Below the pieces are notes generated by a model. That model was not told the origin of the DNA. It searched no databases and saw only the letters and a program-made list of their open reading frames with translations. Of a stretch of DNA of 64,000 nt, positions 49,513 to 58,900 are shown piece by piece. The position numbers and the translations under genes were made by a program. The stretch comes from Gracilinanus agilis (lineage: Eukaryota). Location: NCBI RefSeq assembly GCF_016433145.1, contig NC_058133.1, positions 194,163,422 through 194,227,421 on the forward strand. The letters run 5' to 3'. Numbering within the stretch: the first letter of the stretch is position 1; every line of letters starts with the position of its first letter.

Positions 49513-49596
49513 ATGGTACAAAAGACCAGTATGTCTCGGGCCTCTTATCCACCCACCCAGGATATCCCGATGGAGGTCTTCGACCCCAGCTTACAG
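49513..49596 (+). CDS. CACNB1: CACNB1 exon 1 ([28 protein letters not shown])
   Basis: tccATGG; CAG|gtaagc donor, phase 0. Confidence 0.95.
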
Positions 49597-52900: not shown

Positions 52901-55900
52901 GGAATACTCTAGGTCTGATTCCCTCTTTCCCAAAGTCTTCTGATCTGAGCCTCATCCCCTGGTTCCCAGGAGGAATTGGTAGAAAGGAACACTATTCTGG
53001 TAAAGAGTTAGGAAGGCAAGGAAAATCCAAAAGGATTTTCTCCAAGAACCCGATGGGGAGTCTACACCCCAGATTTTCAATTTCTCTTTCGCTGGGGGCC
53101 ACTAGCACAGAATATTCTCTCTTGGGAGGTTATGGAGAAGATCTCTCTCTCCTCTGTCTCTCCCTCTACTTCCCCATAACCAGAGGCCAGAGCTCTCTTC
53201 TTCTCAAAGGCTGCTATAGTCTGCCCAGCATCTTAATTAGCTTTTCCCAGCTAACTAGACACTGGCTCCAGCTCTGGGGAGTTGGGGCGGCTCCTCTGCT
53301 CCTTCCTCCTCATCTCCCCAGCCTGAATGTGTTATGTGTTTCATTAGCATCCCCCAGCCCCACCTCCATACCCCAGCAAATGGCTGTGGCCTGGTCCATG
53401 CCTTGGGGAAGAAGGGGGACCCTCTCAGACTGTACCACCTGGCAAAGAAGATGAAGGGTGGGGAATGGAGGAGAAGGTTACTAGGAAGGGAGGGAATTTG
53501 TGGTTACAAATCTTGGTCAGGTCTGGGGGATAGGTGAGGAGACCCCTTCTGACTTTGCCCTTATTGCCCCCCCACTAGCAAGGCAAATACAGCAAAAGGA
53601 AGGGACGCTTTAAACGCTCTGATGGCAGCACCTCCTCTGATACCACATCTAACAGCTTTGTCCGACAGGTAAGTGGGAGAGGTCAGGGATGGGAGCGGTC
53701 TGGGAGTCCTGGGAGGAGAATTTGGGATTGGAAGCAAGAATTAAGGTTGTTTCCCAGGCCTTCATCTCTAGAGTGGCCATTGGTTGCTAGTCTGGGAGCC
53801 TCTCTCCACCCCTACACTTTTTCTGTCTTTACTTAAGGTATGCTATGACTAAGCCCAGACTCTTAAGTCATCATATTCATGGCATTGGTTTATAATCCCC
53901 ATCCTGTAATCACTTCTCCTGACATCTACCCCAAGACACTTGGGTCACCTAGATTCAGAGATACTTCAGAGAGAATATAGGCTTTTACCTCTACCCATTG
54001 TCCTCCTGCTCCCACCTCACTAGTAGCCTCTTCAGGCTGAGGGTAGGAATAGAGGGAGAGATCATTAGGGCTCCCTAGGTCCAAGAGGGATAGTTGGCTC
54101 TATCCCTAGAACACCGAGGCCCCCTAGAAAATTCTGATCTAAAAATAGCTAGAGAAAATCTATCCACACCGATTCTTTGAGGAGATATAGATTGGGGGTG
54201 GGAGGCAGTGTTCAGAAGGAAGAGAGAGTGAAATCAGAGGCAGAGGGTTTTAAACCAGAAATACTGACTACAGTGTGATGAGCAATATTGGGAAAGCTAG
54301 TTTATGGGTCTCCTTTTCACTCTGCTCCCCTTCCTCACACCCCACTTCGTTCCACCCCCAAACCCAACCAACCAAACCCAGGCCTCAGTGAGAAGCAGTA
54401 AGAAAGGCGATGCAGTTGTCATGGCAACCATGCATCTTGACAAGGACCTGGTACCCAGAATAGATGGTGCTCCAATGGCAGAGTTCCTGGTGCTGGGGGT
54501 GGGGGGTGGGGCGGGGCACTGCTGGAGAAGAGAGACGGGGGTGAGTGGCTGGAAGGAACAGATCAGAAGGGACAGGATATACTTCCAGAGGTCACTCTTC
54601 TGAGTCCAGGAAAGGATTGAGGCTACTGAGGTTCAACCTAGTTCAAGGCAAAGTCTTCTAGTCTGTTTCCTGCCGTTTTGACTAGTTGCCCTATCATGGA
54701 CCCAGAACCAACCAGAGAAAATAGTTTGGGAGTTAAACCTTCATTCCAGGGTCTCCTATCCCCTCAACAGGGGGACGTCCTTTGGTTGATCTATGTCTCT
54801 ACTTGGAAGCTAAGCCAGTGCTGGAATATAAGATAAAGCCATGCCCAAGGCTGTACCTTTCTTTGGTAGAAAAATAACTCTCTGGTCTTACAGAGTTTGC
54901 TAAGCCAGGGGAGTCAGGATTATCTCTCCACACACACCATATCCCAAGTTCTCCAGCTCCTCCCCATTCCCTGCCTGACCCTACTCATAGTAGGAGAGGG
55001 TGCCCAGTTCCTGTTGTGTCTCTGGGCTAAATATACCCCAGCAGTTTGCAAATGTAGCAACTCTGCCTGAAACCTGAGCCCCCTGGGGGGAGCAGGCAGC
55101 TAGGGCAGCCCCTGCCCACCCCTTGGGGATGGGCAGAGAGGGCGCCAGCATGGAGACACCCGGCCGGACCAGACAGGCTGTGTTGGTGAGCAATGGGGTA
55201 TGGGTGCATGCAGCCCCTCAGAGGGGCTTAGAAGGAGATGAGGGGTTGGTGTGGAGAACCTGTCTCCTTTGAGCCCTCTCCTTTCCTTATGGCCTTCCCA
55301 TTTTCTCCCAACTGTCTCTTTCTCCCTGCTTTTCTTCCATTCTTTCTCTGAGTAGGCCCAGTCTGGAGGAGAGATGTTCAGGAATGGTGAGGGTGAATGT
55401 GGATATTTGGAATTACTCTCCTGTCTTCTTGTCTGGCATTTCCCTTCCTCAGTCTTCTATACTTAAGTTTTCCCCTGCACCCAGTTCCCTCCATTTTTGT
55501 TGTCTGTGTGAGAGGGGTTGATTGATTGAATAGTTAGTTTATTGACTGGGTGTGAGGAAGGGGCTCTTTTTGTTCCTTTTACTCTATTCTCCTTTTTTTG
55601 GTGGGGGTTCATCTCTTAAATCCTTCCTCTGGGGCAAGACTGAGGGACTTATAAGAAAGAAAACTAGCCACATTAGGAGGAAGAACTGTGGGAGGAGAAA
55701 CACAGAAGAAAAACAACTGCTTGAACACATGGGCTGATGGGGATATTATTGGAGATGTAGACACTAAACAATAACTCTAGTCCAACTATCAATAATATGG
55801 AATTAGGTCTTGATCAATGATGTAAAACCCAGTGGAATTGTGTGTCAGCTAAGCAGGGTTAGAAGGGTTTGGGGGAGAAGGAAAGAACATGAAATATTTA

Positions 55901-58900
55901 ACTAGGAGAAAATATTCAAAATAAAAAAATTTTTTTAAGAAATCCTTCCTCTGGGGATTGAGAGCCAGACCTAGAGACTGGAGGTCTTGGATTAAAATCT
56001 GACCTCAGATCTTTCCTAGCTGTGTGACCCTGGACAAGTCACTTAACCCCTATTGCCTAGCCTTTACCACTCTTCTGCCTAACCAATATGCAGTACTGAT
56101 TCTAAGACAAAAGTTAAGGTTTAAAAAAAAATATCCCTTCACTGCCTGGACCCATTCTCCTTTTGGACCAGCTTAGCTATTTCCTCCTGGTCCCTTCATT
56201 CCCACTATCTCCCCCGCAACTTCCCAGACCTATTCCTCCCTAGAAAGAGCCAAAGAGCCACCATAGGGAGGTAGAACCTCTTTTTGCTTTCTGAGGAAAG
56301 GTTTCTTCCAGCTCTGACCACCCTCACAATGACATACTCCACCCCTGTTCAAACACCCCCTCACAGACGGCACAAAACCAGCCCTCGCTGCTCCCCTCAC
56401 TTGTACACCCACAAGCAGTAACATAATCAGGCACACACTGTCACAGGCACATGCAGGCTGCAAGCATCCGCAAAACTCTCTCTCTGTCTGTCTCTCTGCC
56501 TCTGTTTCTCTCTCCATTCAGCCCCCCTTTCTCTAACTCAATCTCTCTTACTTTCTTTGATAATATACATAGTTGTGCTCACACATGCACACATAGAAAC
56601 ATTGATTTAATCACATATATGCAAAGTCAAATAATCATGGGTACCTGCAGAAAAACATGCTTATTTTTGCTGAATATCCTCGTCATTACCAACAGTCAAT
56701 TGGGCACAGCTTCCAAGGCAGGTACACCTTAGCTTGAACATCCCTGTCATCTCTGTATCCTTGGGAGTGTTCAATGCTTATTCCATCTTGGGCTCCAGGG
56801 CAGAAGGCAAGGAATACTTCCATAGGTGGGAGGCTGCCACTAACATGTGCTCCAGGCTTGCTTCTTCAGTGGGCACTCTCTGGGAAGCCTTGTGTCCTTG
56901 TGGTGCTAAATAAGGAAGGGAAGGGAGTTATGACCGAAGACCCAGGCTGTGCGATGATTGTCTTTAGGAAAGGAACTCAGGTCTATGGGATGGTACCTGA
57001 TAGTGCCAACCAGAAAAATTACTTCAGTGGGCATGAAGGCCTGATTATGGTGGTAGCAGTGGAGGGTTGGAGAGGGGCAGGGAAGAGTTCTGATTCTGTC
57101 CCTTGAATAAACAGGAAACAGTATAACTGCTTTTTGGTATCTGTTGCAACCAGATTCCCCTTTCCAGGTTGGAGCACCCACTTCCAGCAGTTCAGTGATC
57201 CCAATTCCAGGTCTGGGCAAACTGCAGTTGGCTAGCAGGGATGCCATGGGAGGCATGAATTAGACTCAACTGAATAAGGGGATGTAGAGAAGTGGGGAGG
57301 GCTAAGAGGCTGCAGTGACACTCATGTTGGCGTTGCTCCCCTGAGCTTATGTCCCTATCAAGTTCCCTTCCCCTCCCTTGGCCCCCAGAACAGCTGTTCC
57401 TCACCTTAATCTTGTTCAGGCGAGTGCCACCCCTTTCCTTCAATGACCCTGACCCCCTCCAACCCTTTCTTCCCATCCTCTACCCCAGCCCGTGTTCCTT
57501 CTCCCCAGTGTTTACACAATTGCTTCCCTAGAAACTGCCTTGTGGCCTCATGTCACCCCAGCTTCTGGCCTCCTTTTGTGGAGTCAACTCTAAAACTGAC
57601 CACTCTTCCCTAGTATCTTCTTAATCCTGTCCAATGTTTCTTCTGCCTCTGTCTTTCTCCTCTTAGGTATTCGACCCAAACCCTGGCCACTCTTTCCCAG
57701 TATCTCCCTAGTCCTGTCCAAGGTTTTTTTTAGCTCCTTTCTTCTTGGCCTCCCTGACTCTTTCACTCTCATCCCAGAGTTCTGTTAGTCTTCATAAGTC
57801 TGTTCCCTGCCCTATCCCCGATTCTTTCCATATGCACCCAGATCCTGGTTGTCTCCTAGTGCCATCCCAACCTCTATTGTGTTACATGGAATTAACTTGT
57901 TCTTGAAAATCTCCAGTTTGGGTTGTCCTTGGTCCCCTTAATCAATTTTACTGCAATTCTGATACTGGAATGGAGGTGGGGCTCATGGTATAGGGGGAGG
58001 AGGAAAGACTGCATAGATGTCCTTCCTCTCTCCACTTCCAGGGCTCCGCGGAGTCCTATACCAGTCGGCCCTCGGACTCAGATGTATCTCTGGAGGAGGA
58101 CAGGGAAGCCCTAAGGAAGGAGGCAGAGCGCCAGGCATTGGCACAGCTTGAGAAAGCTAAGGTAGGTTCATGCATGCATAGGAGATATGTTGGCTTTGTT
58201 GTTACACTTCCATTCCCACCTTCTCCTTGGATCAACCCTCAATTTCAATCCAGATCTCCTCTACTTGCAGCCGTCTCTCTAAAGAGCAATTAATATACTG
58301 GTGGGCTCTGGACAGGGAAAGAGGGGGTTTTTGCTTATTATATTTCTCCTACTCTTGCCCAGACCAAGCCAGTGGCATTTGCAGTGCGGACAAATGTGGG
58401 CTACAATCCATCACGAGGGGATGAGGCACCTGTCCAGGGCATGGCCATCACCTTTGAACCCAAGGATTTTCTGCACATCAAGGAGGTAAGGGATAGGGAA
58501 AGTGGGGCACACATGGGGAAGGGGTGAGACAAAATAACCCCAGGGCTGGGCAGTCACAGGTGGAGGCTCTCCAGAGGGAAAAACATTGGGATATGAAGGG
58601 GCATTGGTGCATAAAGAGAGGCAGAAGCTCTAGGCAGCATCCATAGGTGTTCAGACTTCAGTCAAGTAGGCTTTAGAGAAGAGATTGGCTCTTGGTGGGT
58701 GTTCAAAATGGAAACGAACTGGAAGATACATTTTGAGGGGCAACTCTATTGGACTGGGGTGGGCAAAGCTAATGAAGCTAAAGGTATTGGTAAAGGTACT
58801 TCTGGGAGGCAAAGGGATTTCTTGTAAGACAGAGGGGAGGAGTAGTAGCAGGGACTGTCTAATGGAGGGAAGCTCCACATCTTGGAGCAGGGCTGTTGTG

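What the first reader, a model, noticed from the sequence alone, without database searches (positions are those of the whole stretch)
55027..55191. Hidden alternative first exon of CACNB1 in intron 2 ([12 protein letters not shown])
Seen: Kozak-like gccagcATGG at 55150, 12 open codons, and a TTG|gtgagc donor in phase 0 that joins exon 3 in frame ([22 protein letters not shown]...). A TATA/MEF2-like CTAAATATAC lies at 55027-55036. The ORF track misses it. Known: CaV beta genes (CACNB2, CACNB4) vary their N-termini through alternative first exons spliced to the equivalent exon. Recall, unverified: eutherian CACNB1 has a short N-terminus like MEVPSRTLVV, and a mouse adult-muscle isoform starts at an intron-2 exon. 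Inference: this is the marsupial orthologue, so the promoter switch would predate the therian split.
Basis: partly seen in the sequence, partly recalled or inferred. Interest (0 to 1): 0.75.

Follow-up and report, generated by a model that had tools for sequence, protein, structure and literature searches.

The report
Opossum CACNB1 adult-muscle alternative first exon
This is the opossum copy of a known second promoter and short first exon inside the calcium-channel beta-1 gene (mouse "exon 2B"); it is real and very old, but it is not a new kind of element.

Summary
ATG 55150, 12 open codons, a phase-0 GT donor at 55186, in-frame exon 3 at 58042 and CTAAATATAC at 55027 are all present, in intron 2 of CACNB1. 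The window is Gracilinanus agilis.

The pattern alone is not beyond chance, because four such ATG-plus-donor sites lie in this intron. Conservation settles it:
- The block 54980-55180 is about 96% identical in three Australian marsupials, against about 70% for the intron.
- It is the best of only three intron-2 blocks that align to eutherians (E 8e-23 and 4e-28).
- In eutherians it reads MEVPSRTLIV|GTGAGC, the annotated eutherian alternative N-terminus (MEVPSRTLVV).
- Antechinus RefSeq models already carry [12 protein letters not shown] spliced to exon 3.

Homologous 12-residue first exons are annotated from sharks and zebrafish to birds. The upstream motif GCTAAATATAC, with a nearby MEF3/Six site in mammals and the bird, occurs once per locus in opossum, bats, a bird and an eel.

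Transcription, splicing and muscle specificity in opossum remain inferred. This is a known kind of element, so interest is modest.

The parts
55019..55128 (+). Conserved core promoter and probable 5' UTR of the alternative first exon (the counterpart of mouse Prom2)
   Evidence: About 96% identical among 4 marsupials, against about 70% for the intron. Aligns to pangolin L005 4847-4994 (76%, E 8e-23) and bat L007 4833-4981 (78%, E 4e-28). The TSS itself was not observed.
55026..55036 (+). GCTAAATATAC, an A/T-rich TATA-like / MEF2-like box
   Evidence: Invariant in 4 marsupials, pangolin, bat, cuckoo and eel. It occurs exactly once in the 64-kb window and once in each of loci L001-L008, always upstream of the alternative exon. 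It matches YTAWWWWTAR at 9 of 10 positions; the strict MEF2 and TATAWAW patterns gave no hit.
55069..55077 (+). GAAACCTGA, an exact MEF3 (Six1/Six4) consensus
   Evidence: The only copy in the window. CTGAAACCTGAGCC is identical in cuckoo L006 3119-3132. Other mammals have GTAAC[CT]TGA. The consensus is as quoted in PMC5062961. Binding was not tested.
55129..55131 (+). Upstream in-frame ATG (context ggggATGg). It would give the N-terminus [19 protein letters not shown].
   Evidence: Conserved in all 4 marsupials and absent in pangolin and bat. The Antechinus RefSeq X4 model P0260 starts there ([19 protein letters not shown]). Its 7 codons show 5 amino-acid changes against 1 silent change, so constraint as protein is weak.
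55150..55185 (+). Coding part of the alternative first exon: 12 codons, [12 protein letters not shown]
   Evidence: The first 9 codons are invariant at the DNA level in 4 marsupials, with no indels. It is homologous to eutherian MEVPSRTLVV/LIV, which has a 6-nt deletion, and to 12-residue first exons of birds, turtles, amphibians and fish.
55186..55191 (+). Phase-0 splice donor GTGAGC
   Evidence: Identical in 4 marsupials, pangolin, bat and cuckoo. Home-made matrix score 7.3, against 10-12.7 for the donors of exons 1-3.
55198..55203 (+). Possible second donor 12 nt downstream (GGG|GTATGG, phase 0), which would add VSNG
   Evidence: Antechinus X3 (P0266) uses the equivalent donor, giving ...AAVVSTG|GSAESY. 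It scores lower here, at 5.1.
58042..58161 (+). CACNB1 exon 3, the shared acceptor exon ([12 protein letters not shown]...EKAK)
   Evidence: 100% identical to exon 3 of many tetrapod CACNB1 proteins.
49513..49596 (+). Canonical exon 1 ([28 protein letters not shown]), the start that the alternative exon replaces
53579..53668 (+). Canonical exon 2 ([17 protein letters not shown]...FVRQ), which transcripts from the alternative exon skip

Best explanation
The element is the Gracilinanus agilis orthologue of the internal promoter and alternative first exon of CACNB1, known as mouse 'exon 2B / Prom2' and human 'exon 1b'.

Inferred mechanism: RNA polymerase II starts inside intron 2, just downstream of a TATA/MEF2-like box (55026-55036) that is paired with a MEF3/Six site (55069-55077). 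The first exon carries a 5' UTR without competing upstream ORFs, then 12 codons from ATG 55150, or 19 codons from ATG 55129. It ends at the phase-0 donor at 55186 and splices to exon 3 at 58042.

The product is a CaV-beta-1 subunit whose 58-residue exon-1/2 N-terminus is replaced by a short one; the SH3, HOOK and GK regions are unchanged. By analogy with mouse Cacnb1D, this is expected to be the main adult skeletal-muscle form.

Shown here: the sequence features, orthology, and strong constraint on the promoter block, the ATG, the frame and the donor. Inferred: transcription start, splicing and tissue or stage specificity in opossum.
For: 1. Position in intron 2, with an ATG, an open frame and a phase-0 donor in frame with exon 3.
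2. Among four marsupials that span the American-Australian split, 54980-55180 is about 96% identical, against about 70% for the intron. The ATGs, the donor and both motifs are invariant, and the coding part has no indel.
3. It is the strongest of only three collinear intron-2 blocks that align to eutherians. In pangolin and bat the homologous stretch reads ATG...|GTGAGC in the same frame, encoding MEVPSRTLIV and MEALSRTLMV.
4. Annotated eutherian isoforms begin MEVPSRTLVV, MEAPSRTLVV or MEAPNRTLVV directly before GSAESY.
5. Antechinus flavipes RefSeq isoforms X4 and X3 begin (MDTEGAN)[12 protein letters not shown] spliced to exon 3.
6. Twelve-residue homologues are annotated in turtle (METPSKEHRPVL), birds (MEIPGKDHPTAP), salamander, coelacanth, lungfish, sturgeon, zebrafish (METTARIQRPAM), eel and sharks.
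7. GCTAAATATAC occurs once per locus, always upstream of this exon, in all 9 sequences. Cuckoo shares 15-nt and 14-nt exact blocks with opossum, and eel shares 24 of 27 nt.
8. Mouse experiments show that exon 2B has its own promoter, is never joined to exon 1, and marks the postnatal and adult Cacnb1D isoform. MEF2A is listed there among candidate Prom2 binders.
Against: - No RNA evidence was available for this species: no TSS, no junction reads and no protein.
- No G. agilis protein with this N-terminus appeared in two database searches that ranked such isoforms at the top. The exon is therefore unannotated there, or its expression was too low for the annotation pipeline.
- The donor is weaker than those of the neighbouring exons.
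- The sequence pattern alone is within chance expectation.
- CTAAATATAC is not a perfect MEF2 or TATA consensus.
- In human myotube culture, exon-1b transcripts were only about 1.3% of CACNB1 reads, so usage depends strongly on context.
Confidence: 0.9

Rival explanations
1. The exon is real, but in marsupials translation starts at the upstream in-frame ATG 55129. The N-terminus would then be the 19-residue [19 protein letters not shown] rather than the reader's 12-mer.
For: - ATG 55129 has G at -3 and G at +4 and is conserved in all four marsupials.
- No other ATG lies between the conserved promoter box and it, except ATG-TAG at 55052.
- The Antechinus X4 RefSeq model starts at the equivalent ATG.
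- Under the scanning model the first good AUG is used.
Against: - The seven extra codons change mostly at the amino-acid level among marsupials (5 replacement changes, 1 silent).
- They are absent in eutherians, the bird and fish.
- ATG 55150 has the better context (A at -3) and is the start conserved across vertebrates.
- The TSS could lie downstream of 55129.
Confidence: 0.45
2. The block is a conserved intronic enhancer, or a promoter of a non-coding transcript. In opossum the short ORF is not translated into a CaV-beta-1 N-terminus.
For: The upstream 110 nt are as conserved as the ORF. A second block at 54280-54600 is even more conserved without being coding. No RNA data were available for this species.
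Against: The ATG, the frame, an indel-free ORF and GTGAGC in phase 0 are kept in every mammal examined and in the bird. Annotated proteins with this N-terminus exist in a marsupial and in many vertebrates.
Confidence: 0.05
3. It is a chance ATG-plus-GT arrangement in an intron, with no function.
For: Four comparable arrangements exist in intron 2, against an expected 0.3-1.3 per intron.
Against: Conservation is far above the intron background, and there is significant alignment to eutherians, the bird and the eel at the orthologous place. The other good candidate, 54421-54540, fails the same test: it has a 2-nt indel and a changed donor.
Confidence: 0.01
4. It is an internal cassette exon spliced between exon 2 and exon 3, rather than a first exon with its own promoter.
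For: None specific. AG dinucleotides exist upstream.
Against: An in-frame TGA at 55075-55077 closes the frame upstream (one search lists an ORF ending at 55077). No pyrimidine-rich acceptor precedes the ORF. All annotated homologues start at this Met. In mouse long reads, transcripts starting at exon 1 never contain exon 2B.
Confidence: 0.03

Closest known systems
Mouse Cacnb1 exon 2B / promoter Prom2 (isoform Cacnb1D, CaV-beta-1D); human CACNB1 'exon 1b'
   Same: - Same gene and same intron (between exons 2 and 3).
- Own ATG, a short ORF and a phase-0 GTGAGC donor onto exon 3.
- DNA-level homology of promoter plus exon to eutherian loci (E 8e-23 and 4e-28).
- The peptide is ME.P.RT..V., like the annotated rodent MEVPSRTLVV.
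   Different: - 12 codons instead of 10; eutherians carry a 6-nt deletion.
- Marsupials have an extra in-frame upstream ATG.
- Adult-muscle specificity, the denervation response and chromatin marks are known only for mouse. I did not hold a mouse or human locus, so pangolin and bat stand in for eutherians.
Antechinus flavipes RefSeq predicted isoforms X3 and X4 of CACNB1 (P0266, P0260)
   Same: Marsupial orthologues. [10 protein letters not shown] is identical, and so are the upstream ATG and the donor. The surrounding DNA is about 88% identical.
   Different: The last two residues are AV against VL. These are annotation-pipeline models, not experimentally characterised isoforms. X3 uses a donor 12 nt further downstream.
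'CaV-beta-B type' short N-terminal first exons of other beta genes (beta-2b, beta-2e, beta-3, beta-4a and snail LCav-beta-B; PMC3972191)
   Same: Same gene architecture. A downstream, mutually exclusive first exon encodes a short N-terminus that splices to the exon beginning GSA(D/E)SYTSRPSD.
   Different: - There is no clear sequence similarity between the beta-1 peptide and those of beta-2, beta-3 or beta-4.
- That 2014 paper stated that vertebrate beta-1 has only the exon 1a/1b form.
- A second, beta-3/beta-4a-like class (MYLY.LDDSE) is annotated for CACNB1 of turtles, a caecilian and sharks, but I did not find it in this window.
Muscle promoters driven by MEF3/Six plus MEF2 sites (myogenin promoter, aldolase A pM promoter)
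   Same: An exact MEF3 consensus GAAACCTGA lies next to an A/T-rich MEF2-like box, and both are deeply conserved.
   Different: Factor binding is untested here. The A/T box departs from the MEF2 consensus at its last base and may act simply as a TATA box. No conserved E-box is present: CAAATG in marsupials is CACATG in the bat and TACATG in the pangolin.

Membership tests
CACNB1 exon 2B / 1b alternative first exon | Lies in the intron between canonical exon 2 and exon 3 of CACNB1, on the same strand | tested here: met
   Exon 2 ends at 53668 and exon 3 starts at 58042; the element is at 55019-55185 on the + strand.
CACNB1 exon 2B / 1b alternative first exon | Own start codon, a short ORF, and a phase-0 donor compatible with exon 3 | tested here: met
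   ATG 55150 (and 55129), 12 (or 19) codons, TTG|GTGAGC; exon 3 starts in phase 0.
CACNB1 exon 2B / 1b alternative first exon | Sequence homology to the eutherian exon and its flank | tested here: met
   blastn of window 55019-55170 against pangolin L005 (76%, E 8e-23) and bat L007 (78%, E 4e-28). Same frame and same donor. The peptide compares with MEVPSRTLVV of P0165 and P0236.
CACNB1 exon 2B / 1b alternative first exon | Actually spliced to exon 3 in mRNA | not testable with these tools
   No RNA data for G. agilis. Indirect support comes from the Antechinus RefSeq X3 and X4 models with this junction.
CACNB1 exon 2B / 1b alternative first exon | Own promoter (TSS, Pol II, H3K27ac) and never joined to exon 1 | not testable with these tools
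   Shown only in mouse. Here there is only a deeply conserved upstream block with TATA/MEF2-like and MEF3 motifs.
CACNB1 exon 2B / 1b alternative first exon | Postnatal or adult skeletal-muscle expression, falling after denervation | not testable with these tools
   Mouse data only.
MEF2 binding site | Matches YTA(A/T)4TAR | tested here: not met
   CTAAATATAC has C where the consensus has R at the last position. The strict pattern gave no hit in 54700-55260.
MEF3 (Six1/Six4) binding site | Matches the myogenin MEF3 consensus GAAACCTGA | tested here: met
   Exact match at 55069-55077, unique in the 64-kb window. Consensus from PMC5062961. Protein binding was not tested.

The most novel reading that the evidence does not exclude
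The two-promoter design of CACNB1 is ancestral to bony, and probably all jawed, vertebrates. A roughly 60-nt core promoter (GCTAAATATAC plus a MEF3/Six site) and its 12-codon first exon have travelled together for more than 400 million years. The embryonic-to-adult promoter switch described in mouse muscle would then be an ancient vertebrate programme, not a mammalian one. Marsupials would add a lineage-specific upstream AUG that lengthens the N-terminus to 19 residues.
Probability: 0.5. Interest if true: 0.45.

Novelty: new member of a known kind. Interest (0 to 1): 0.3.

Why it matters
For annotation, G. agilis, and apparently most marsupial gene sets in the collection searched, lack the isoform that in mouse is the main adult skeletal-muscle CaV-beta-1. 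Adding it corrects the expected muscle protein.

For biology, the comparison gives the groups working on Cacnb1 Prom1/Prom2 a short, sharply defined footprint to mutate: GCTAAATATAC and GAAACCTGA, kept from opossum to bird and in part to eel. It also shows that the short N-terminus is under long-term constraint.

The human disorder caused by truncating variants in exons 1-2 (PMC12963491) depends on how much the exon-1b isoform can compensate. A deeply conserved promoter argues that this isoform is functionally important.

None of this changes the known picture; it extends it.

Tried and rejected
- Pattern-only test. ATG plus open frame plus phase-0 donor is not significant in this intron, so I dropped it as evidence.
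- Competing candidate 54304/54421-54540, which has the better donor and sits in a block 98% conserved among marsupials. I rejected it as coding because marsupials differ there by a 2-nt indel and the donor changes from GTGAGT to GTGAAT. It looks regulatory.
- The strict MEF2, TATAWAW, CArG and CAGCTG/CACCTG E-box patterns gave no hit near the exon. The one E-box-like CAAATG is not kept as CAAATG in eutherians.
- There is no CpG island: CpG observed/expected is 0.16 or less.
- The second alternative N-terminus class (MYLY.LDDSE) is not found anywhere in the window.
- The look-up of encoding contigs returned nothing for P0156, P0321, P0252 and P0207, because only the longest product of a gene is on record. 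As a result I obtained no rodent, frog or Dromiciops locus.
- Species assignment from protein identity failed because the protein is too conserved. DNA identity settled it.
- The search of earlier findings held nothing on CACNB1.
- Exon 3 was searched by reference on its own, and full-length database proteins served as later queries.
- A human protein (P0164) surfaced in the hit lists. I excluded it from the first N-terminus tabulation and used it in no query, alignment or look-up. I took no contig for human.
- I take L005 for pangolin because its called product is identical to Manis javanica isoform X1.
- L003 is the same genome as the window. It overlaps only the N-free part, and I used it only to identify the species, not to read any masked stretch.

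Full report
**What is in the sequence.**
The window carries the 5' half of CACNB1 on the + strand.
- Exon 1 runs from ATG 49513 to 49596, exon 2 is 53579-53668 and exon 3 is 58042-58161. Further exons reach about 63.5 kb.
They are gccagcATGg at 55150, twelve open codons ([12 protein letters not shown]), a TTG|GTGAGC donor at 55186 in phase 0, and exon 3 starting in phase 0 with [20 protein letters not shown] lies at 55027-55036.
It would give [19 protein letters not shown].

**Is it more than chance?**
Not by pattern alone. A simple donor matrix finds four donors in intron 2 that follow an open ATG frame in phase 0 and score at least as well. Shuffled introns give 0.3-1.3 such sites. One of the four, 54421-54540, even has the better donor. 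The question therefore had to be settled by comparison with other genomes.

**Species and comparison loci.**
- I searched exon 3 by reference on its own (result). I never assembled the spliced 12-mer plus exon 3 model.
- Full-length database proteins then served as queries.
- The loci of their longest isoforms were fetched: L001 Antechinus flavipes, L002 Petaurus breviceps, L003 Gracilinanus agilis, L004 Trichosurus vulpecula, L005 (its product is identical to Manis javanica X1), L006 Cuculus canorus, L007 Rousettus aegyptiacus and L008 Anguilla anguilla.
- L003 is 100% identical to the window over 4701 nt, so the window is G. agilis.

**Conservation in marsupials.**
- Across intron 2, the mean identity of the window to the three Australian marsupials is about 0.70.
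- Two blocks stand out: 54380-54530 at 0.98 and 54980-55180 at 0.96.
- In the second block, both ATGs, the first nine codons, the donor GTGAGC and the upstream motifs are invariant, and the ORF has no indel.
- The peptides are [12 protein letters not shown] (Gracilinanus), ...AVV (Petaurus) and ...AAV (Antechinus, Trichosurus).
- The first block fails as a coding exon because it has a 2-nt indel and a changed donor.

**Orthology with the eutherian exon.**
- Only three collinear pieces of intron 2 align to the pangolin locus. By far the best is 55019-55170 (76%, E 8e-23). The bat gives 78%, E 4e-28.
- In the alignment, the eutherian sequence reads ATG...|GTGAGC in the same frame. It encodes MEVPSRTLIV (pangolin) and MEALSRTLMV (bat), and a 6-nt deletion explains 10 codons instead of 12.
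- Annotated eutherian isoforms begin MEVPSRTLVV (Acomys X4, Octodon X4), MEAPSRTLVV (Ursus, Molossus), MEAPNRTLVV (Urocitellus) or MEAPNQTLVV (Bos), directly before GSAESY.
- The literature confirms the rest. In mouse, 'exon 2B' has its own promoter (Prom2), marked by Pol II and H3K27ac in adult muscle. It is never joined to exon 1 in long reads, and it defines the postnatal and adult Cacnb1D isoform (bioRxiv 10.1101/2025.06.10.658789).
- The same exon is called 'exon 1b' in human (PMC12963491).

**Already annotated in a marsupial.**
- Antechinus flavipes RefSeq isoform X4 begins [26 protein letters not shown]3 begins [22 protein letters not shown] and uses a second donor 12 nt downstream.
- The window has the equivalent weaker donor at 55198.
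- No protein with this N-terminus from G. agilis or the other marsupials appeared in searches that ranked such isoforms first.
- The exon is therefore 'hidden' in this genome's protein set, but not unknown in marsupials.

**Much older than the therian split.**
- Twelve-residue first exons of the same pattern (M-E/D-T-x-x-K/R-x-H/R-R/Q-x-x-L) are spliced to the same exon in many annotated proteins.
- They include birds (MEIPGKDHPTAP), turtles (METPSKEHRPVL), geckos, a salamander (MEPPNRAHRTAL), a caecilian, lungfish, coelacanth (MDTAERVHRTVL), sturgeon, zebrafish (METTARIQRPAM), eel and sharks (MNTLEKTHRGLL).
- Marsupials keep the ancestral length; eutherians lost two codons.

**The promoter footprint.**
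- GCTAAATATAC occurs exactly once in the 64-kb window and once in each of the eight loci, always upstream of this exon.
- The cuckoo shares GGCTAAATATACCCC and CTGAAACCTGAGCC exactly with the opossum. Their spacing is 38 nt in the cuckoo and 41 nt in the opossum, and they lie about 100 nt before its MEIPGKDHLAAP|GTGAGC exon.
- The eel shares 24 of 27 nt starting at the same box, about 400 nt before its ATG. That fits a core promoter anchored to the TSS rather than to the ATG.
- GAAACCTGA at 55069 is the exact MEF3 (Six1/Six4) consensus quoted in PMC5062961 and is unique in the window.
- The A/T box misses the strict MEF2 consensus by one base and may serve as a TATA box, a MEF2 site or both.
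- There is no CpG island and no conserved E-box.
- Between the box and ATG 55129 the only ATG is an ATG-TAG at 55052.

**Mechanism and limits.**
- The best reading is an internal, probably muscle-type, promoter. Its first exon splices to exon 3 and swaps the 58-residue exon-1/2 N-terminus for a short one, leaving the SH3, HOOK and GK regions untouched.
- Which AUG marsupials use is open. The upstream one is conserved and first in line, but its seven codons evolve like non-coding sequence, with 5 replacement changes against 1 silent.
- Transcription start, splicing and adult-muscle specificity in opossum are inferred from mouse and from the Antechinus models. No RNA data could be consulted.

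**Verdict.**
The element is a member of a known kind, so novelty is low. The deep promoter footprint and the marsupial upstream AUG are modest additions.

**Housekeeping.**
- A human protein (P0164) appeared in the hit lists. I excluded it from the first N-terminus tabulation and used it in no query, alignment or look-up.
- I took no contig for human.
- I did not touch any N stretch.

Noticed in passing
window 54280-54600: This is the most conserved block of intron 2 among marsupials (up to 98%), with a weak match in pangolin (54385-54463, E about 3e-5 to 8e-5). It is not coding, because it has a 2-nt indel. It holds an RFX-like palindrome GTTGTCATGGCAAC near 54415 and a CCAAT motif. It is probably an enhancer, or part of the upstream control region of the alternative promoter.
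   Followed up: partly
window 57328-57397: This is the third and last intron-2 block that aligns to the eutherian locus (80% over 70 nt, E 1e-9). It is also a local identity peak among marsupials (0.93). Its function is unknown.
   Followed up: no
window about 55600-56130: This stretch is absent from the three Australian marsupial loci, and 74-88% similar copies lie elsewhere in the same gene (L003). It is most likely a lineage-specific interspersed repeat inserted just downstream of the alternative exon.
   Followed up: no
window 53576-53584 (exon 2 acceptor): The opossum acceptor reads ctag|CAAGGC, giving ...PSLQ-QGKY. Australian marsupial RefSeq sets list both QQGKY and QGKY forms, which suggests a tandem acceptor there that the didelphid sequence cannot offer.
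   Followed up: no
database proteins P0205, P0213, P0251, P0212, P0007: A second alternative N-terminus of CACNB1 is annotated in turtles, a caecilian and sharks. It resembles beta-3 and beta-4a (MYLY.LDDSE, spliced to GSAESY). No trace of it was found in this window, so it may have been lost in mammals.
   Followed up: partly
L008 2205-2215 (eel), minus strand: An inverted AACCTGAGCCC lies about 100 nt downstream of the conserved A/T box in the eel. It may be the fish counterpart of the MEF3 site, in the other orientation.
   Followed up: no
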